IMG/VR virus record: IMGVR_UViG_3300028840_002431
Coordinates: 248,001 to 312,000 of that record
Direction: 5' to 3' (one strand)
DNA: 64,000 bases
The translations under genes and the position numbers were made by a program. The notes below the pieces were generated by a model. It worked only from the letters and a program-made list of their open reading frames with translations. It was not told where the DNA came from and searched no databases. This document shows positions 20,857 through 50,362 of this stretch, one piece after another. Numbering within the stretch: position 1 is the stretch's first letter; the number at the start of each line of letters is the position of its first letter.

Positions 20857-21357
20857 ATGCCGACCAAAGAGCAGAAGAGAAGGGCCGAAGTAAAAAAGAA
20901 GAAGGCCGAAGCCGAAGCCCAGCATCTGGACGTAGCTGTTAAAACGGTGAACTACTGGCTCCAGCGTGCCAGGGCCGACGGCCGGGAAGAGTTCGTTGTG
21001 ACTGTGGAGCCGATGCGCCTGATTCTGGCCGCTCTCGAAAAGGAACTGGACGCCCTCAAGGACTGGAAGCGCGAGGCCAAGAAGAAAAAGAAGGCTCTCA
21101 AGCAACTGTCCGGTTGCGTCTCGTCTTTCCTGGTCTCCCTGGACACCCTCATGAACGAACCGGAGTCCTACGAGAGAGGCCGTAAATTCGCCCGAATTGC
21201 TAACACCCTGGACAGGGCCAATGATGAAGCCCGGTATTTCGAGCTAGGGGTGGACCACCGGAAAGACGAGAAAAAGCATGATCCTCTTGTAAGCTCGCAG
21301 GGGTATGAAGCTTGCCGAACGTGTGGCTGCCCGGTACCGGGAAGCGATAATTCGTAA
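20857..21357 (+). CDS. Hypothetical protein
   Basis: ORF immediately after rtcB. Confidence 0.5.
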   Translation: MPTKEQKRRAEVKKKKAEAEAQHLDVAVKTVNYWLQRARADGREEFVVTVEPMRLILAALEKELDALKDWKREAKKKKKALKQLSGCVSSFLVSLDTLMNEPESYERGRKFARIANTLDRANDEARYFELGVDHRKDEKKHDPLVSSQGYEACRTCGCPVPGSDNS

Positions 21358-21673
21358 AGAAAAGGGCGAATTCTGCGTCCGCTCGCCTAACAATCCCGAC
21401 TGGAACGGGGGTTGTTACCCCACCGAGGGAGAGGCCAAGAAGCGCCTCCAACAGGTGGAGTTCTTCAAGCATAAGAAAGCCTGGGAAGGGAATGAACCTA
21501 ACGAGTCTGAAGATCTGGCCGTGACGACATACGAAGCGTCAGAGGCCGCCGCCGACTACATCAAGCGGCATCTTCCCCGTTACTTCAAAATCGATTCCGG
21601 GACCCTTAGGCAGATCCAGAAGGCCACGTACTCAGCCATGGCTGATATCCTGTCTCGGAAGTACCAACAGTAG
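21305..21673 (+). CDS. Small protein with N-terminal RVAARY tag (candidate virion protein)
   Basis: MKLAERVAARYREA followed by IIRKEKGEFCV...EAKKRLQQVEFFK. Confidence 0.6.
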   Translation: MKLAERVAARYREAIIRKEKGEFCVRSPNNPDWNGGCYPTEGEAKKRLQQVEFFKHKKAWEGNEPNESEDLAVTTYEASEAAADYIKRHLPRYFKIDSGTLRQIQKATYSAMADILSRKYQQ

Positions 21674-37330: not shown

Positions 37331-37855
37331 TTTTGAGCCTCTTACGCGACCATGGAACCTGGAAACTCTCGGCCCCTACTCGGTGCCTACCCAGTCAGAA
37401 TGCTACTTGATTATCGGAGCTACTTCACCTGACATCTCTTCGTCAGCGAACTTCCAGCAAAACCCTTGGGCACTACTGTCTGTCCAATGTACAACCGAGG
37501 TGATGTTCTCCTTCACTGTCTGGCGTCCGTATTGATCCTCCGCGCCTTCGTTCTTATCAACGACGACCAGATTCACACACGGCCAATGCTTCCCGGCTTC
37601 TTTGTAGTCGGAAAGGATATGACCTTCTTCGTCCGTCTCAAAGATGTACGTGTCGTCCGTCCCCGTTGGGTTCGGGTTCGGCTTCCGACGTGACACCACC
37701 AAACGGCCTTTCGGATCACCGTGTATGCAAATAAGCAGGGCATCTCGCTCCTGCCTGTTCGCATCTACAAACACCAGATGCTGTCCGATTCTCAATTCAC
37801 GTTCCATGTTACCTGCCTTTCAGCGCGGCTCCATTGCCGCGTAAAAGGCTCAAAA
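37331..37855. repeat. 29-bp imperfect inverted repeat pair (37331-37359 and 37827-37855) flanking one ORF
   Basis: ttttgagcctcttacgcgaccatggaacc vs ttttgagccttttacgcggcaatggagcc, 25/29 identical. Confidence 0.7.
37403..37807 (-). CDS. Hypothetical protein
   Basis: 134-aa ORF between the inverted repeats. Confidence 0.55.
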   Translation of the reverse strand: MERELRIGQHLVFVDANRQERDALLICIHGDPKGRLVVSRRKPNPNPTGTDDTYIFETDEEGHILSDYKEAGKHWPCVNLVVVDKNEGAEDQYGRQTVKENITSVVHWTDSSAQGFCWKFADEEMSGEVAPIIK

Positions 37856-39094
37856 CTCTTCGGGTGCCCCACCGCAGTCTTCACACAACTCGTGGATGAT
37901 AATTTTGTTGGGGCCGCTGCAACGGCATTGGCTGACGACCGTCCCGCAGCTAGGACAAATGACTGTGTAGTGGTCGCCCGGCCCCACGTCGTCCATGGTC
38001 TTTGGCGCAGAAGCGAGCCTGATGGCAAGTCCAAAAGCGCCCAACTTGTCGATAATGGAGCCGTCTTTCAAATAGTTCTCGGCAAGACCCGGCACGAGAT
38101 ATTGACTCTTGAGAGTGGACGCCTCGTGGCCCACGGCTTCGGCCGTCTCTTCTAACGCCTTCTTGAACTCTTCTTTGAGCTTGGCCTTCCGTTTCTTGGG
38201 GTCGCTGGGCAACGCTCCTTTCCGGGCCGCTTTGAGGCGCTTACGCATCTCGTCATTCGCGTGGTAGCCACGGATATCCTTGGACGTTACCTCAAACGGT
38301 TTCAGGTAGGCGTTGACCTTGTCGGCTGTTACTTTGCCGCCATCCCAAGCCAGGATGTTAGAATCGCCCCCGTCCATGTCGTCATAGGCTTGCCGAAGAG
38401 CTTTCTGGATCGCCTTATCCGCGACCTTCTTCTCCTGTTTGACCCCGGACTTTCCCACGTACTTGATGAACGCCCCGTCCGGCTTGAAGCTTACCTGACT
38501 CCGTTTCCAACCCGTGACCCCGTAGTGCCCGTCTTTGGCTGACTGGTCATTCCCGATTCTCTCGTATGTGTGGTCCATGAGCGCCACAGCGAGAGCAGTG
38601 CGAGCCGTTTCCGGGTTGCTCGACTTCATGTCCTTCTTGACCTTGGCCCTAATCCGTCTGATAGCCCGGCCTAGCTTTTGTAACCGTTCCGCCTTCTTGC
38701 GGTTCCGGTCAGCTATCTGACGCTCCGAGTAGACGTAGACCGTGGTCTTGCCGCCATTCTCAGACTTGACTTCTTTCTTCTGTTTGTACTTACCGGTCAG
38801 GTACCTCTCGACGACGCCTTTCTTTTTCTTGAGGGCCGCCTCTTCCATCGCCATCGCTTCTGGCACCTTGTCGGGCGACATCTTACGAATCGTATAGAGG
38901 CCCATGGTCCGATTCTTCTTACGCCCCTTGGGAATCGGCTGAAGCTCGATCTTTGGGTTCCCTTTCTCGTCCAGGAACATACGAACGATCTTACCCCGCT
39001 TGTTCTTGAATTTGCCGAAGAGGATATATTCCCCCGGCTTGAAGTAAGCGGTCAGGTAGCGCGTCGCGACCCGGTGTGTGAGAGGTTCACCCAT
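37850..39094 (-). CDS. DNA topoisomerase IB (bacterial/poxvirus-like core) with extra N- and C-terminal modules
   Basis: ERIGN..YGVT, YVGKSG, KDIRGYHAN, VGH..STLKSQY (catalytic Tyr). Confidence 0.88.
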   Translation of the reverse strand: MGEPLTHRVATRYLTAYFKPGEYILFGKFKNKRGKIVRMFLDEKGNPKIELQPIPKGRKKNRTMGLYTIRKMSPDKVPEAMAMEEAALKKKKGVVERYLTGKYKQKKEVKSENGGKTTVYVYSERQIADRNRKKAERLQKLGRAIRRIRAKVKKDMKSSNPETARTALAVALMDHTYERIGNDQSAKDGHYGVTGWKRSQVSFKPDGAFIKYVGKSGVKQEKKVADKAIQKALRQAYDDMDGGDSNILAWDGGKVTADKVNAYLKPFEVTSKDIRGYHANDEMRKRLKAARKGALPSDPKKRKAKLKEEFKKALEETAEAVGHEASTLKSQYLVPGLAENYLKDGSIIDKLGAFGLAIRLASAPKTMDDVGPGDHYTVICPSCGTVVSQCRCSGPNKIIIHELCEDCGGAPEEF

Positions 39095-42558: not shown

Positions 42559-43458
42559 CTAAGGCGTCGGGTCCGGCTGTTCCGTCAGGCCAAGGCCCTC
42601 CTTCGACACACCCAACTCGGAGAGTAGCTTGTCCGCCTCGTTCTCACCGTCTCCGGTTTCACTGGCCGGTGGAGTCGCCGCCGCTTCTTCTACGGCGGGT
42701 TGTTCCGGTTCGGCCGGTTTCTCCGGGGGTGAGGCGCTGGTCGTTGGAGCCGCCTCCGGGCTGCTAGGAGCCGTCTCCTCACCGCCTTTTGGGGACGAGG
42801 TCTTTCGGGTTGCCGTTATCTTGCCGTTCCGCTTCCGGACCCAGTCGGCCACCTTGAAGCGACCCCGATCGACCGTATCGAAGACCTTGGCCTTCATGGG
42901 CTTACCGTCCTTGTCGCGAACGATCTTACCCTTCTTGTCGATCTCATTCGGAGCGTCCTTGGAGCCACGGGCACCGCTGAACACCGAACTGATGTAGGCC
43001 GGGAGGTTGTTGCTGGGCGGGTCGATCCCCTTCTCCGTCAGGGCTTCGGCAACGTCCTTAGCGCCCATGGTCTTCGCGCCCATGAGCTTGATCATGGTCT
43101 CGACCAAAGTACCCTTGCGCTTGTTCTTGCCACCCTTCCCCTTGGCCGGTGCTGCCTTCTTCTTAGGGGCTGCCTTCTTCTTCGCCGGGGCTGCCTTCTT
43201 CTTGGCTGCCTTCTTCTTCGGGGCCGCCTTCTTCTTGGTGGCTGGGGCCGCTGCCTTGCCGTTCTTCTTAGGGGCCTTGAAGAAATCGCGGAACCTGTCA
43301 GATTGCTCCTTGGTGTCTTCGTACTCCTTGAGAGCGGCCTCGTGTTCCGATGTCGCCTTGGCCAGAGCTTTCTCGGTCACACCCAATCTGTTTTTGGCCG
43401 CCGAGACCGCTTTATCCAAGTCCCGTTGAACCTTGTCGAATATGACATTTGTTCCCAT
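42559..43458 (-). CDS. Histone H1-like / nucleoid-associated protein
   Basis: Coiled coil, KKKAAP repeats, possible winged-helix segment, acidic Pro-rich tail; RBS AGGAGA. Confidence 0.65.
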   Translation of the reverse strand: MGTNVIFDKVQRDLDKAVSAAKNRLGVTEKALAKATSEHEAALKEYEDTKEQSDRFRDFFKAPKKNGKAAAPATKKKAAPKKKAAKKKAAPAKKKAAPKKKAAPAKGKGGKNKRKGTLVETMIKLMGAKTMGAKDVAEALTEKGIDPPSNNLPAYISSVFSGARGSKDAPNEIDKKGKIVRDKDGKPMKAKVFDTVDRGRFKVADWVRKRNGKITATRKTSSPKGGEETAPSSPEAAPTTSASPPEKPAEPEQPAVEEAAATPPASETGDGENEADKLLSELGVSKEGLGLTEQPDPTP

Positions 43459-45735: not shown

Positions 45736-47373
45736 TTATTTCCGGGTCTTGGGTTTATAACCCCTCCGGGTCGGCTCGACCTTGAAGCCGAACTTCTTAC
45801 CCACCTTGGCCAGGGCTGCAAGGGTCGCTCTCTCGGAAGTGTCAACATCGCCGCCTTCATCGAGCGGGAACTGCACGTCAACACGGGTCTCGCGCTTCCA
45901 ACCCATCTTCTCCTGTTGATAGGTCAGCGGTCCGGAGTACACGTTGTTCAAGACCTTGAGATTCACATCGTGGACGTTACCGTCGTCGGCAACCACGGGA
46001 ATCGTTGTACGATTGATGACCCTGATGGTGTCGATGTTGAAAGGAACGGGCTTGCGGCCCTCAACAAACAGAACACTCATCCGGTCAGTCGCGTAGCTGA
46101 AGCCGCCGACCTTCTCCAAGAAGCGACCGACGACCGACCCGGCTGATTTGAACTTGTCCTTGTTCTTCTCGTTTTCTTCACGCCATTTCTTGGCGTCTTC
46201 GGGACTCATGTTCTTCGTTGGGTCGGCTGGCTTACCCTCTTCAAACCGGCCGATCATCCCCTCATCCGCCGTTTCAGCGGCGGCCTTCAAACCTTTTTCT
46301 CTCATACTCTCCTCACGACGAGCTACGAAACGGTCCCAGTCATGCAGACGGTTACTAACGGTCAACGCCATCTCGGGGAAGGTGGCCCGGCCGCCGCTCT
46401 TGTTAGAGTCGAAGTGTGTCCACCGTCCGCCGTCTGACATGCGGACGAAATCCCGAAAACTCCAGGTCAGCTTCAAGGTATCGGTACCGCCGTATACCTT
46501 GTCCGTGATGGAGACCTCCTGTCTGAAATCGTAATCTGCCCAGTCGCTACGGCCTGAGCCATAGACCGGCGTCGGCTTCCCCAGCTTCACGTTGAACCCA
46601 AGATCCTCGAACTCGGGCAGACTGGCGCGTTCGAAACCCACCAAACGCCTCACAAGACGCTTAGCCGCCTCGTTGATGATATCGTTGATCTCTTCGAGTT
46701 CTCTTTGGTACTGCGGGAGGATGTGCTCGTGGAAGCCCTCCTCTTCCGAACGCCTCTGATACTCTTCGTCTCTGGAGTCAGTTACCCAGTCCACCTTCGT
46801 TCGCTGGGACACCATGCGATCGATTAGCTTGCAGTCCTTTGTCTCAACGGACTTGAACTGCGGGGCAGCGGCGTCCTTCTTGAATTTATCTTTGTTCTTC
46901 TGGTGCTCCTCACGCCACTTTTTGGCGTCCTCAGGACTCATATTCTTCGTAGGGTCAGCGGGTTTCCCTTCTTCGAAGCGAGAAACGACCTCTTCGCTCG
47001 ACGTGTCGGTCATGCCGGACTCCTTCGCGTAGCGCTCCCAACTTCTGGAGTAGACTTCTTCGTCATCGACTTCCATCTCGAACTTACGCCAAGCGTCTTC
47101 GGCCTTCTTGCCTACCATGAAAGTCTTGGTTCGCGGCCAGTACAACACGAGATCGCCGCGTTTAAACGGTGTCCCGTCGTCTGCCTTACCTGGGTATCTG
47201 GCGTGTATCCAACGGGGGTCGCCTTTGACGTAGCGAGCGCTCTTGAATTTATCCCCGTGCTCCTCGTTCATCTCCCGCCACTTGGCGGCCTGTTCGGCGC
47301 TCATGTTCTGAGTCGGGTCAGCGGGCTTACCCTTCTCGAACTTGGAGACTACGTTTTCCCTGGCATTAGGCAT
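45736..47373 (-). CDS. Repeat-punctuated multi-domain protein (candidate virion polyprotein)
   Basis: Three FE(K/E)GKPADPT(Q/K)NMS.E.A.KWRE...DKFK repeats. Confidence 0.75.
   Translation of the reverse strand: MPNARENVVSKFEKGKPADPTQNMSAEQAAKWREMNEEHGDKFKSARYVKGDPRWIHARYPGKADDGTPFKRGDLVLYWPRTKTFMVGKKAEDAWRKFEMEVDDEEVYSRSWERYAKESGMTDTSSEEVVSRFEEGKPADPTKNMSPEDAKKWREEHQKNKDKFKKDAAAPQFKSVETKDCKLIDRMVSQRTKVDWVTDSRDEEYQRRSEEEGFHEHILPQYQRELEEINDIINEAAKRLVRRLVGFERASLPEFEDLGFNVKLGKPTPVYGSGRSDWADYDFRQEVSITDKVYGGTDTLKLTWSFRDFVRMSDGGRWTHFDSNKSGGRATFPEMALTVSNRLHDWDRFVARREESMREKGLKAAAETADEGMIGRFEEGKPADPTKNMSPEDAKKWREENEKNKDKFKSAGSVVGRFLEKVGGFSYATDRMSVLFVEGRKPVPFNIDTIRVINRTTIPVVADDGNVHDVNLKVLNNVYSGPLTYQQEKMGWKRETRVDVQFPLDEGGDVDTSERATLAALAKVGKKFGFKVEPTRRGYKPKTRK
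46141..47352 (-). repeat. Three dispersed ~39-codon repeats: 47236-47352, 46870-46989, 46141-46257
   Basis: Near-identical peptides separated by unrelated domains. Confidence 0.85.
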
Positions 47374-47376
47374 CTG

Positions 47377-48066
47377 TCACCGCCACTGCGAGAAATGGGT
47401 TTCCCAGTTGATCTTGTTCTTCCGGAACCAGTCAGTGAGGTTCCCCCAAGATACGTTCTTCAAGGCAGTAGGGTCGGCCTTGAGAATCTTGTACAGCTTA
47501 CGGGCCGACGCCGGGGCCGTGGACTCGTACATCGTGTAGTGCGGGTCGGCTTGCTGGAAATCAGACTTGGGGTCGTAGACCTTGAAGCTGGTCCACCTTG
47601 CGTGAAGAGTGAAATCCTTGCCCTTGGCTTCGATCGGGTCCGTGTCCTCAGGCTCGATCTTGAGAAAGTGCTCGGTGAACTCGTCCCATCTCGGCTCTTT
47701 CTTGATCCACTCGAAGTGCTCTTTTTTATCCGGCTCCTGCTTCTCGTAGGCTATGTCGGCGGCAGTCCTCAGGGCCTCAGTGAGCTTGTCCTTCACCCGG
47801 TCGTAGTTGTCGGACCGGCTTAGCTTGGCATCGTCCAGGACGTTCTCCGGGATGAAAGAGGAGAAGCCGTGCCAACCCCTGTCCATGAAGGTGCTCGCGG
47901 TAGATACCCGAAGCTTCTTTTTACCCTTCTGGGGCATCTCTTCCAAACGCCATACGTTACGGTTCCACCGAAGGCGGCAATCGCGGCCTAGGAACTTGCC
48001 GTCCCAACTGCCATAACGACCGGTCCTGCTTTGGAATCGAGTCAAAATCTGTTGCGCGTCAATCAT
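47377..48066 (-). CDS. Hypothetical protein, N-terminal QILTRFQSRTG (candidate virion protein)
   Basis: RBS GAGG; same block as the repeat protein. Confidence 0.6.
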   Translation of the reverse strand: MIDAQQILTRFQSRTGRYGSWDGKFLGRDCRLRWNRNVWRLEEMPQKGKKKLRVSTASTFMDRGWHGFSSFIPENVLDDAKLSRSDNYDRVKDKLTEALRTAADIAYEKQEPDKKEHFEWIKKEPRWDEFTEHFLKIEPEDTDPIEAKGKDFTLHARWTSFKVYDPKSDFQQADPHYTMYESTAPASARKLYKILKADPTALKNVSWGNLTDWFRKNKINWETHFSQWR

Positions 48067-48071
48067 AAGCC

Positions 48072-48479
48072 TCACCCTAACACCACGGTCACGTCGTACT
48101 TTTCGAGGGGGTCCTCAAGAGTCCCCGCTCCCGCCGCCGTGATGGTACCGTGGATGATTTGTTCCCTGCCCCTCTCGTTGACGTAGGGGATCTCGATTCG
48201 CCACACCTTTGAGCTAGGCATCTTTGGCCGGGGTATCGTCCGCGACCACTCGTAGTCAGCCCGCTTTATTTCATACGGGATATCGTGATTCCTGAAAATC
48301 TTGAAGATCTCGTGAACGGGCTTCCAGTACGTGTCTCGGAAAATACCGTCCGGCGTGTTGCCGATCAGCTTGTAGAGGTACCGGACCGCTTTCTGCTTCC
48401 GCATGGAATCCAGCGGGTTAGCTTCTTCCAGGGCGGATTTGTAGCGAGCTACGACCCGATCAGAGGCATTCGCGTCCAT
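48072..48479 (-). CDS. Hypothetical protein, N-terminal DRVVARYKSA (candidate virion protein)
   Basis: RVVARY at 48441-48458. Confidence 0.6.
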   Translation of the reverse strand: MDANASDRVVARYKSALEEANPLDSMRKQKAVRYLYKLIGNTPDGIFRDTYWKPVHEIFKIFRNHDIPYEIKRADYEWSRTIPRPKMPSSKVWRIEIPYVNERGREQIIHGTITAAGAGTLEDPLEKYDVTVVLG

Positions 48480-48502: not shown

Positions 48503-49768
48503 CTAAGCGTTTTCCGCAGCCGCTTTTCTGACTATCAGGGCAGATCCAGGATTGGCCACCGCCTCTGCGGTGATTCGGATAGCGGAAACGTCAGGGCTGT
48601 CCGGAGCGTCGAAAGAGTAAGGTTTGAGCACGTCCTCCATGATGGTCCTGAGCGCCCTGGCTCCGGTCTCACGCTTCTGGGCCAATTTGGCGATATCCCT
48701 AAGCGCTTCTTCTTCGAATTGAAGGTCGATGCCGTCAAGGGAGAACATGGCCCTGAATTGCTTGCAGATGGCGTTCTTCGGCTCAATGAGAATGCGAATC
48801 AACTCGTCTTCTGTCAGTTCGTAGGTCGATGTTAGAATCGGGAACCGGCCGACGGTCTCCGGTATCAGACCGAACTCCAGGACATCCTCAACTGTGATGT
48901 TCTTGTAGATATCGGTCTTGTCCCGTTCTTGGGCGTGTTCCCTTCCGAACCCGATGCCCGTCGAAGCGTTGAGACGATTATCAACAAGCTCCTCGATTCC
49001 GGCGAACGACCCGGCCGCTATGAAAAGGATGTTGGTCGTGTCGATGACATCGACAGGGGAAACCCCGGAAACCGCTCTCGTCCCGTGCCCCCGTGGGACC
49101 GGAACCTGATGGCCTTCCACGAGCTTGAGCAACGCCTGTTGCACACCCTCACCGGTTACGTCTCGATACCCGGAGGGACTACGGCCCGATTTGCGGGCGA
49201 GCTTGTCGAACTCGTCCAGAAAGATGATACCCCACTCGCACCGCTCGATGTTCTGTTGGGCGTCCGCAAACAAGCCTTGAAGGATGGATTCGGGGTCGTC
49301 TCCGACGTACCCAGCTTGGGTCAGTCTGTTACAATCGGCCACGTAGAAGGGGACATCTAACGCTCTTGCGATCGCTCTGGCGATCAGGGTCTTACCAGAT
49401 CCGGACGGGCCGGGGAGTAATATGTTAGATTTCTCGATCTCGACCCTTTCACCTTCTAACACTACCCCGCCATTCTTACTCACTTCCCGACGGCGGAAAT
49501 GCTTGTAGATGGCTATGGCCATATCCCGCTTGGCGGCCTCCTGTCCGATGACAATCTCGTCCAGTAAAGCCATGATTTCACGAGGCTTTTTCAGCGGTAC
49601 GTTGGAAGTGGACTCGGCCTTTCGCTCGACTTCCGCGATAGCCCTGGACGCCTCCTCGATGCAACCCTCGCAGATGTGCGGGCCGTCCGTAGCGCCCACG
49701 AGATGGTTGACCTCGTTTCGGGGACGGTCACAAAAATCACACTTCTTCTTAGGGTCCTTATCGGCCAT
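48503..49768 (-). CDS. clpX: ATP-dependent Clp protease ATP-binding subunit ClpX
   Basis: C4 zinc domain, IGQEAAK, KSNILLPGPSGSGKT, GYVG, FLDEFDK, RDVTGEGVQQALLK, IGF loop; promoter motif at 49778-49789. Confidence 0.95.
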   Translation of the reverse strand: MADKDPKKKCDFCDRPRNEVNHLVGATDGPHICEGCIEEASRAIAEVERKAESTSNVPLKKPREIMALLDEIVIGQEAAKRDMAIAIYKHFRRREVSKNGGVVLEGERVEIEKSNILLPGPSGSGKTLIARAIARALDVPFYVADCNRLTQAGYVGDDPESILQGLFADAQQNIERCEWGIIFLDEFDKLARKSGRSPSGYRDVTGEGVQQALLKLVEGHQVPVPRGHGTRAVSGVSPVDVIDTTNILFIAAGSFAGIEELVDNRLNASTGIGFGREHAQERDKTDIYKNITVEDVLEFGLIPETVGRFPILTSTYELTEDELIRILIEPKNAICKQFRAMFSLDGIDLQFEEEALRDIAKLAQKRETGARALRTIMEDVLKPYSFDAPDSPDVSAIRITAEAVANPGSALIVRKAAAENA

Positions 49769-49792: not shown

Positions 49793-50362
49793 CTAGGGTG
49801 TCAACCACAAACCCAAAGACTGCAAAAGAGCTTTAGCAGCCTTGTATAGCTTCTCGACCAAACTTACGAGCGGTCCCACATCGTTGGCTCTCTCCGCCAT
49901 TTTTATAAAAGAACTGGAACCTACAAAACTTAGCTGTTCGACGACTTTTTCATCAAGCCCTACCCGACCCGTTCCGATTCTCTTTTGCATGACGGCGGTG
50001 TCTCTGTCGTTCAGATCGGTTTTGAACTCGTTGATTGCCTTCTTCCACTCTCCTTCACGTACGTTATCGTCGAAATCCCCAAACGTCACATCACGCAAGG
50101 TAAACCGGTCCCCAAACTGTCCCCGTTTCGCCTTGGCGATTCTGTCCCACTTGTTCCTGATCTGTCGATCGGCGGACAACCAAATCAAATAGCCCCAACT
50201 GTTGTACGGTAGCAGGTGGGTGTCGATAAAAGTCGATGGGATGTGTAAGGATTCCAGATACCCCGGCCCCCAATAGCGATCGGGAGGAGGTCCCCGCCAT
50301 TCTTCAACCCGCGCTTCTCTATGAAACCCCTCAACATAACGTTTGACGACGTTGTGTTTCAT
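49793..50362 (-). CDS. Hypothetical protein, N-terminal NVVKRY..REA (candidate virion protein)
   Basis: RBS GGAG before MKHNVV; ATGA overlap with the nitrilase stop. Confidence 0.55.
   Translation of the reverse strand: MKHNVVKRYVEGFHREARVEEWRGPPPDRYWGPGYLESLHIPSTFIDTHLLPYNSWGYLIWLSADRQIRNKWDRIAKAKRGQFGDRFTLRDVTFGDFDDNVREGEWKKAINEFKTDLNDRDTAVMQKRIGTGRVGLDEKVVEQLSFVGSSSFIKMAERANDVGPLVSLVEKLYKAAKALLQSLGLWLTP

What the first reader, a model, noticed from the sequence alone, without database searches (positions are those of the whole stretch)
45736..48479. Beads-on-a-string protein: three 'FEEGKPADPTKNMSPEDAKKW...DKFK' repeats, each preceded by the tag and followed by a different domain
Seen: repeats at 47236-47352, 46870-46989 and 46141-46257. 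Each starts with VVSKF, VVSRF or MIGRF and ends DKFKSA or DKFKKDAA, and they separate unrelated domains of about 80, 200 and 130 aa. The two upstream genes also start with the tag. Inference: the repeat is a capsid-interior anchoring or spacer module, and the protein is a cleavable cargo polyprotein with interchangeable payloads. The repeats could also promote domain shuffling by recombination.
Basis: partly seen in the sequence, partly recalled or inferred. Interest (0 to 1): 0.65.

Follow-up and report, generated by a model that had tools for sequence, protein, structure and literature searches.

The report
Shared address repeat on huge-phage proteins
A 545-residue protein of an uncultured 416-kb phage carries three copies of a highly conserved 40-residue peptide between three unrelated domains. 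The same peptide marks a very variable gene of the head-gene cluster across this phage clade, so it most likely directs swappable payload domains to the virion, though this has not been shown.

Summary
ORF 45736-47373(-) encodes 545 aa with three copies of a ~40-aa module (core SRFEEGKPADPTxNMSPEDAKKW...KDKFK). They separate three unrelated domains: A 75 aa, B 198 aa, C 131 aa.

The window is part of a 416,539-bp viral record from sediment and seawater metagenomes. The module occurs almost only in a clade of 200-536-kb phages that share a 292-aa major capsid protein (median 92% identity). It is essentially absent from 185,579 cellular species genomes.

Its main carrier is not this gene. In 49-51 of 77 viral loci it sits on a helical protein in the head-gene cluster: protease, acidic scaffold-like protein, capsid protein, then the carrier. 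That carrier has 1-4 repeats and very variable payloads, including domain A.

In the closest relative, domain C is a free-standing gene with only the short N-terminal tag. The neighbouring gene there has a full repeat plus the tag. Payload swapping at repeat and tag boundaries is therefore shown.

The short tag ([VI]-h-x-[RK]-[FYW], 3-12 residues after the start) is also real. It occurs in 20 genes, against 3.4 expected.

A virion or capsid address function fits the context but is inferred. Cleavage was not tested. Recombination driven by the repeats is not supported at the DNA level within this gene.

The parts
45736..47373 (-). P0001, 545 aa: [repeat 1]-domain A-[repeat 2]-domain B-[repeat 3]-[tag]-domain C
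47227..47364 (-). Repeat 1 (aa 4-49), starts VVSKF
47002..47226 (-). Domain A (aa 50-124): small beta domain plus helix, pLDDT about 95. It recurs in 33 repeat proteins, 30 of which are head-cluster carriers.
46864..47001 (-). Repeat 2 (aa 125-170), starts VVSRF
46270..46863 (-). Domain B (aa 171-368): helical hairpin plus beta sheet, pLDDT about 70. Found only in the three closest homologues.
46132..46269 (-). Repeat 3 (aa 369-414), starts MIGRF
46120..46134 (-). Internal tag VVGRF (aa 414-418), directly after repeat 3 and before domain C
45739..46119 (-). Domain C (aa 419-545): alpha/beta, ferredoxin-like arrangement, pLDDT about 95. It recurs in about 20 proteins and is a free tagged gene in the closest relative.
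47377..48075 (-). Upstream gene (232 aa) with N-terminal tag ILTRF (48034-48048). Its orthologue in the 398-kb relative has a full repeat plus a tag at this position.
48072..48479 (-). Upstream gene (135 aa) with N-terminal tag VVARY (48441-48455). The tag is kept in its orthologues.
48503..49768 (-). Phage ClpX (zinc finger plus AAA+). A neighbour, and a candidate but not favoured reader of the tag.
49793..50362 (-). Gene of 189 aa starting MKHNVVKRYVEG (tag at 50336-50350)

Best explanation
The ~40-aa repeat is a peptide-level docking or address module specific to one clade of huge phages.

Structure. It has a disordered, nearly invariant N-terminal half (SRFEEGKPADPTxNM) followed by an amphipathic helix (SPEDAKKW...KDKFK).

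Main carrier. The module sits mainly on a helical protein encoded in the head-gene cluster. Payload domains are strung behind it, each bounded by a repeat.

What P0001 is. It is a detached string of three such payload units. One unit, [repeat-A], belongs elsewhere to the head-cluster carrier. The other, [repeat-B-repeat-tag-C], is typical of the locus next to ClpX.

Most likely function. The repeat, and the short N-terminal tag that resembles its first residues, bind a conserved virion component during head assembly. The best candidates are the very conserved capsid protein or the scaffold core. Unrelated payloads would then be incorporated into the particle and probably delivered with the DNA. 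This would resemble the T4 capsid-targeting sequence, the coat-binding end of scaffolding proteins, or encapsulin cargo-loading peptides.

Shown: the module, its selection at the peptide level, its restriction to this clade, the head-cluster home of its main carrier, and fusion, fission and swapping of payload units at repeat and tag boundaries.

Inferred: binding to a virion component, location inside the capsid, delivery into the host, and any cleavage by the head protease.
For: 1. Peptide-level conservation. Over 95 copies the mean column identity is 71%. D, P, T, M and W are invariant and 11 more positions are at least 90% conserved. The carrier domains around the repeat are only about 49% identical. 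Synonymous codons differ between the three copies in P0001.

2. Predicted structure. The N-half has pLDDT under 50 and the helix 73-89, as expected for a motif that folds when it binds.

3. Distribution. Only 2 loci were found in 185,579 species genomes, both on MAG contigs, and one of them is also a viral record. 77 loci were found in IMG/VR, many on contigs of 200-536 kb. All 8 complete repeat-bearing genomes have the same capsid protein at 85-99% identity to this phage's (83-99% in 23 of the 24 matching records, 66% in the other).

4. Genomic context. The genome's other copy ends P0124, an all-helical 391-aa protein. P0124 lies a few genes from the major head protein (phrog_2522, E 2e-49) and the head maturation protease. 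The same order is seen in 49-51 of 77 loci.

5. Carrier domain. 113 of 179 repeat proteins carry the P0124 N-domain, and 30 of these also carry domain A.

6. Unit equivalence. In the closest relative, domain C is a free gene with an N-terminal tag. The neighbouring gene there has repeat plus tag plus domain.

7. Terminal copies. Copies at the N-terminus (20) and C-terminus (25) show that the module is not a mere linker.

8. Payload types. Payloads in relatives include Peptidase_C39, intein-bearing regions, DUF2958 and an HMG box. These are effector-like rather than fibre-like.

9. Precedent. Giant phages package about 50 head proteins, many of them ejected. T4 propeptides target proteins into the prohead core (PMC10052503).
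Against: P0001 itself lies among replication and metabolism genes, not structural genes.

No virion proteomics exists for this uncultured clade.

The single complex prediction, capsid protein with repeat, gave no answer.

Co-occurrence with the capsid protein follows from shared ancestry and is not independent evidence.

The head-cluster position shows only that the carrier lies among virion genes. It does not show that it sits inside the capsid.

The payload folds gave no functional match.

The family of the protease and its cleavage specificity are unknown.
Confidence: 0.45

Rival explanations
1. External display. The head-cluster carrier is a fibre-like or decoration protein on the outside of the virion. 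The repeats anchor or space variable surface domains for adhesion or receptor binding. P0001 would dock to the same site.
For: The carrier gene lies in the structural cluster, upstream of a collagen-like ORF of more than 1900 aa. The carrier is long and all-helical. Fast turnover of C-terminal domains behind a conserved N-terminal anchor is typical of receptor-binding proteins (own knowledge).
Against: The payloads seen are Peptidase_C39, intein-bearing regions, an HMG box, DUF2958 and a small ferredoxin-like domain. None is a beta-helix, Ig-like or lectin domain. About 20 tagged proteins, including a type IB topoisomerase, are unlikely surface proteins.
Confidence: 0.15
2. Recognition by an unfoldase or chaperone. 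The tag and repeat are signals read by the phage ClpX, or another AAA+ protein or chaperone, for timed turnover, remodelling or unfolding of a set of phage proteins.
For: Four tagged genes flank ClpX in this window. The tag is an N-terminal hydrophobic-basic-aromatic peptide, loosely like known N-terminal ClpX signals (own knowledge). ClpX is present in 15 of 22 related records.
Against: Two of the 8 complete repeat-bearing genomes have no ClpX match. No ClpP was found in this genome. Most repeat carriers lie in the head cluster, not near ClpX. The other tagged genes are scattered over the genome. The motif has one residue more than the published N-motif-1 pattern (own knowledge).
Confidence: 0.12
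3. Host-hub binding motif. The repeat is a short linear motif that tethers each payload to a conserved host or phage intracellular machine, for example the polymerase, clamp or ribosome. It would have no role in the virion.
For: The N-half is disordered and invariant. Several copies per protein suggest multivalent binding. P0001 lies among replication genes.
Against: This does not explain why the main carrier is a conserved gene of the head cluster. The hosts are unknown, and the motif is absent from cellular genomes.
Confidence: 0.13
4. Passive cassette boundary. The repeat is a neutral, flexible linker kept mainly because it offers homology for recombination between phages.
For: Fusion, fission and swapping events map to repeat boundaries.
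Against: DNA identity between copies is 67-73% and exact runs are 10-13 nt. There are many synonymous differences beside invariant residues. The module also occurs at protein termini.
Confidence: 0.08

Closest known systems
T4 capsid targeting sequence (CTS) of internal proteins IPI-III and Alt
   Same: A short peptide shared by unrelated proteins that directs them into the prohead. It is encoded in a large phage with a prohead protease and a separate scaffold. About 20 tagged proteins here, many small and basic, resemble T4 internal proteins (PMC10052503).
   Different: The repeat is 40 aa, not about 10. It can be N-terminal, internal or C-terminal, and can occur in up to 4 copies. There is no sequence similarity. 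Cleavage after the signal is not shown, and function is not tested.
Coat-binding C-terminal helix-turn-helix of scaffolding proteins (P22 gp8 type)
   Same: P0124 is a long all-helical protein of the head cluster that ends in the lysine-rich helical module.
   Different: A separate acidic protein lies between protease and capsid genes and is the better scaffold candidate. The module also sits on globular payload proteins. Binding to the capsid protein was not supported or refuted.
Encapsulin cargo-loading peptides
   Same: A conserved terminal peptide is shared by unrelated cargo proteins and associated with a gene for a phage-type shell (capsid) protein.
   Different: This is a true tailed-phage head of a 400-kb genome. 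The module is longer, often internal and repeated. There is no sequence similarity.
Polyvalent proteins and MuF-type polymorphic head proteins of phages (Iyer et al. 2017, PMC5512222)
   Same: Many-domain proteins in late or head gene neighbourhoods with extensive domain mosaicism, predicted to be packaged and injected. Peptidase domains occur in some members.
   Different: No MuF domain was detected. Almost none of the payloads is a known effector domain. A conserved 40-aa junction module between domains is not part of that description ('linker' occurs 0 times in the paper's text).

Membership tests
T4-type capsid targeting sequence | Short peptide at the N-terminus of proteins that are packaged in the head | tested here: inconclusive
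   The tag is N-terminal in 20 genes. The repeat is N-terminal in 20 cases, C-terminal in 25 and internal in the rest, out of 387 copies. Packaging is unknown.
T4-type capsid targeting sequence | Removed by the prohead protease at a Glu-containing site | not testable with these tools
   The only data are that [SAG]-x-E lies upstream of 62% of repeats against 22% background. The protease family is unresolved.
Scaffolding protein with coat-binding end | Helical protein of the head cluster whose terminal helix module binds the capsid protein | tested here: inconclusive
   P0124 is helical and lies in the head cluster. The complex prediction gave no answer.
Encapsulin cargo-loading peptide | Conserved peptide shared by unrelated cargo proteins encoded beside the shell gene | tested here: met
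   The module is shared by unrelated domains A, B, C, up232, C39 and others. The main carrier lies 2-8 genes from the capsid gene. This shows a resemblance in logic only, not homology.
Encapsulin cargo-loading peptide | Binds the inner face of the shell protein | not testable with these tools
   The prediction gave no answer.
Polyvalent proteins (Iyer et al. 2017) | Two to 15 domains in one polypeptide of a phage, in a late or head gene context, with mosaic architectures | tested here: met
   Each protein has 1-4 repeats and up to 5 payload segments. There are 107 orders among 176 proteins, and the main carrier is in the head cluster.
Polyvalent proteins (Iyer et al. 2017) | Domains drawn from the known repertoire of conflict effectors | tested here: not met
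   Of 63 carriers, only 4 have Peptidase_C39, 3 an intein and 2 DUF2958. The rest have no Pfam or PHROG function.
MuF-type polymorphic head proteins | N-terminal Phage_Mu_F domain | tested here: not met
   No Pfam match was found for P0124 or for the 63 carriers.
Pfam OAS1_C / DUF2280 | Match over the family's domain | tested here: not met
   Matches cover only about 30 residues, the PADPT..W stretch, of profiles 188 and 103 positions long. This is a local resemblance only.
ClpX N-terminal recognition signal | Co-occurrence with ClpX and a match to a known signal pattern | tested here: not met
   ClpX is missing in 2 of 8 complete genomes that have the repeat. The pattern differs by one residue (own knowledge).

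The most novel reading that the evidence does not exclude
A whole clade of 200-536-kb phages uses a two-part peptide address code. One part is a short N-terminal tag (consensus R-V-A-x-R-Y/F-L-x-A) on about 20 proteins per genome. The other is a 40-aa repeat whose first residues resemble the tag. The code would load a changing set of unrelated payloads, including a type IB topoisomerase, into the capsid for delivery. The repeat would let payload cassettes move between the head-cluster carrier gene and other loci without losing their address.
Probability: 0.3. Interest if true: 0.8.

Novelty: new variant of a known kind. Interest (0 to 1): 0.62.

Why it matters
Huge phages carry hundreds of genes of unknown function, and their virion contents are unknown because none of this clade is cultured.

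A conserved peptide that marks which proteins travel with the particle would give a sequence-only way to list candidate packaged or injected proteins in metagenomic phage genomes. It would also explain how payloads are exchanged so fast beside a nearly frozen capsid protein.

Such a peptide could serve as a ready-made loading tag for putting foreign proteins into large capsids.

The module has no model in Pfam or PHROGs. No paper in the searched library prints its core motif.

Tried and rejected
- Complex prediction of the capsid protein (alignment A5) with the repeat (alignment A2) returned 'no answer' with score 0.00. This counts neither for nor against binding.
- Foldseek on the whole P0001 model against PDB and viral structures found nothing clear. 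The wide VIA search found only generic ferredoxin-like and ACT-like matches for domain C and helical hairpins for domain B, at Z 6-8.
- ESM Atlas look-ups of domain C and of P0124 gave no usable hit.
- PDB sequence searches with the repeat profile, the protease and the carrier profile gave only chance-level rows.
- The Pfam hits OAS1_C and DUF2280 were rejected as local resemblance over about 30 residues.
- A full-text search for the core motif strings returned nothing relevant.
- A nucleotide-level signal was rejected for the tag, because synonymous codons vary freely.
- A recent DNA duplication was rejected for the repeats.
- Enrichment of the tag between the capsid gene and g375 in relatives was weak: 6 of 109 genes against 29 of 1023 elsewhere.
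- The large representative-protein search was not run. The word search and viral scan already gave hundreds of relatives, and no claim here rests on absence in that library.
Full report
**What is there**

The minus-strand ORF 45736-47373 encodes a 545-aa protein, P0001. It holds three copies of a ~40-aa module at aa 4-49, 125-170 and 369-414. In window coordinates these are 47227-47364, 46864-47001 and 46132-46269.

A profile of the three copies scores each at about E 1e-29. Across all six frames of the 416,539-bp genome it finds only one further copy, at the C-terminus of a 391-aa protein, P0124.

The segments between the repeats are A (75 aa), B (198 aa) and C (131 aa). They are unrelated to each other.

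The stretch lies unbroken and without differences in contigs of three public sediment and seawater runs, which may include the source sample.

**What the genome is**

The window is bases 248001-312000 of an IMG/VR viral record of 416,539 bp. GC content is 55% and estimated completeness is 87%.

The neighbours of P0001 are replication and metabolism genes: type IB topoisomerase, a DHH-like protein, DUF1848, ClpX, a carbon-nitrogen hydrolase, an AAA protein, family A DNA polymerase and a DnaB-like helicase.

**The repeat as a family**

A word-based protein search gave 414 unnamed relatives. They carry 1-4 copies each at variable positions, and many lie on contigs of 100-536 kb.

Across 95 distinct copies the consensus is xxEEKxSRFEEGKPADPTENMSPEDAKKWKxxxEKxKDxFKxAA. 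D, P, T, M and W are invariant, and eleven more positions are at least 90% conserved. The 'VV' before SRF is a feature of this phage's subgroup, not of the whole family.

Within P0001 the copies are only 67-73% identical in DNA. Exact runs are 10-13 nt, and 12-19 of the identical residues use different codons. Conservation is therefore selected at the peptide level. It is not a recent duplication and gives a poor substrate for homologous recombination.

AlphaFold models the first half of each copy as disordered (pLDDT under 50). The second half is a confident helix. This is the pattern of a motif that folds when it binds.

Pfam's OAS1_C and DUF2280 hits cover only the roughly 30-residue PADPT..W stretch and are local resemblance. 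No paper in the library prints the motif.

**Distribution**

Among one genome for each of 185,579 prokaryote species, only two loci encode the module. Both are on MAG contigs, and one of them is the same sequence as an IMG/VR viral contig.

IMG/VR gave 77 loci. Several lie on complete genomes of 398-448 kb with terminal repeats.

24 of 26 repeat-bearing records, including all 8 complete ones, encode the same 292-aa major capsid protein. Identity is 83-99% in 23 of the 24 matching records, and 66% in one. The median identity of this capsid protein is 92%. Its neighbours are 38-63% identical.

**Where the repeat mainly lives**

P0124 lies in the head-gene cluster. Nearby are the head maturation protease (phrog_18299) and a 401-aa acidic, Q/E/D-rich protein that looks like a scaffold. 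A 212-aa protein and the major head protein (phrog_2522, E 2e-49) follow. Then come several small genes, UDG, a 375-aa protein, P0124 and a 279-aa protein with a SWIM-like zinc finger.

The same order is seen in 49-51 of the 77 viral loci. It is also seen around P0068 in an NCBI MAG contig.

The P0124 N-domain is all-helical, with modest model confidence. It is present in 113 of 179 distinct repeat proteins. In 30 of these, domain A of P0001 is also present.

In some phages the N-domain and the repeat-bearing part are separate adjacent genes.

**Payload swapping**

176 repeat proteins show 107 different orders of segment clusters. This count is rough because it rests on single-linkage clusters.

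Domains A and C recur at different positions in dozens of proteins.

The syntenic orthologue in a 411-kb relative, P0006, has a different layout.

In the closest relative (398 kb, capsid protein 99% identical) the same position holds a free 164-aa gene that is just tag plus domain C. There, the orthologue of the upstream 232-aa gene starts with a full repeat, then the tag ERVVARF, then the domain.

P0001 thus reads as two joined parts. One is a [repeat-A] cassette of the head-carrier type. The other is a [repeat-B-repeat-tag-C] string of the type found next to ClpX.

Payloads with a Pfam name in relatives are Peptidase_C39 (4 of 63), intein with LAGLIDADG (3), DUF2958 (2) and one HMG box. Most have no match.

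**The tag**

The pattern [VI][VLAIM]x[RK][FYW], lying 3-12 residues after a start codon, occurs in 20 of about 560 genes. For 119 permuted versions of the pattern the mean is 3.4 and the maximum 9. At least one of the 20 is probably a nucleotidyltransferase motif rather than a tag.

The codons vary freely. The tag is kept in orthologues whose flanks differ. It is seen across the clade with the consensus R-V-A-x-R-Y/F-L-x-A.

Tagged proteins are mostly basic and without Pfam matches. They include the type IB topoisomerase at 37850-39094 and DUF5662. Four tagged genes flank ClpX, and four lie between the capsid gene and UDG.

A tag follows a repeat more often than expected in this subgroup, 13 cases against 3.5, although a few of the 13 are not true tags. 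The tag resembles the first residues of the repeat: VVxRFxxG.

**Interpretation**

These facts fit an address or docking module read by a conserved component of the virion. The module is invariant yet disordered, and unrelated domains share it. It occurs at either terminus or between domains. Its main carrier is a conserved head-cluster gene beside a nearly frozen capsid protein.

P0001 would then be a three-payload cargo protein. Known parallels are the T4 capsid targeting sequence, the coat-binding ends of scaffolding proteins and encapsulin cargo-loading peptides. Giant phages are known to package about 50 head proteins, many of them ejected, and T4 propeptides target proteins to the prohead core (PMC10052503). 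Phage polyvalent proteins are the nearest described class of mosaic packaged proteins (PMC5512222).

Binding, an interior location, delivery and cleavage are all inferred. The one hint for cleavage is [SAG]-x-E within 14 residues upstream of SRF in 62% of 387 copies, against 22% background. This matches the A-X-E rule of a giant-phage prohead protease. However, the protease family here is unresolved, and acidic linkers make such matches easy.

**Against, and rivals**

P0001's own neighbourhood is not structural.

A ClpX-recognition reading is weakened for three reasons. Two of the 8 complete repeat-bearing genomes lack ClpX. The phage has no ClpP. Most carriers are far from ClpX.

An external display role is not excluded, but the payload types fit it poorly.

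A purely recombinational or spacer role is contradicted by the codon data and by the terminal copies.

The single complex prediction gave no answer and is not used as evidence.

**Verdict**

The capsid link is supported by family context only. Cleavage is untested.

The module and the tag appear undescribed. I rate this as a new variant of a known kind (peptide-addressed virion cargo), with interest about 0.6.

Noticed in passing
genome-wide; in the window e.g. 37850-39094(-), 21305-21673(+), 49793-50362(-): About 20 genes start with the tag h-h-x-[RK]-[FYW] 3-12 residues after the start codon (clade consensus R-V-A-x-R-Y/F-L-x-A). They include the type IB topoisomerase. Most are basic and have no Pfam match.
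   Followed up: partly
L082:12804-13682(-) and related loci: The 292-aa major capsid protein has a median identity of 92% across the clade, while neighbouring head genes are 38-63% identical. Short capsid-like fragments also occur inside other ORFs of related genomes, e.g. G004:105693-105935.
   Followed up: partly
window 48503-49768(-): The phage encodes ClpX with a zinc finger, but no ClpP was found in the 416-kb record. In some relatives (G003, G007, L023) the ClpX match is split within ORFs of 773-781 aa, which suggests an inserted element such as an intein.
   Followed up: no
L070:191-4684, L074:5497-9921: Repeat proteins of about 1,475-1,500 aa with an N-terminal Peptidase_C39 domain and an intein with a LAGLIDADG endonuclease. 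The repeat lies near the C-terminus.
   Followed up: no
L082:3-5702(-) and both contig ends: An ORF of more than 1900 aa with short, proline-rich, collagen-like triplet repeats runs off the contig start. Both contig ends lie in such repeats, which probably explains where the assembly broke.
   Followed up: no
window 42559-43458(-): A 299-aa protein with a long lysine/alanine/proline-rich stretch (AKKKAAPKKK-type repeats), reminiscent of histone H1-like DNA-binding tails.
   Followed up: no
L082:6805-7644(-): The conserved 279-aa basic protein just downstream of the repeat carrier has a weak SWIM zinc-finger match (C-x-C...C-x-H) near its C-terminus.
   Followed up: no
L082:10746-11147(-): A tagged 133-aa protein with 28% K+R and KKDD-type low complexity lies between the capsid gene and UDG. 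It resembles small basic internal head proteins.
   Followed up: no
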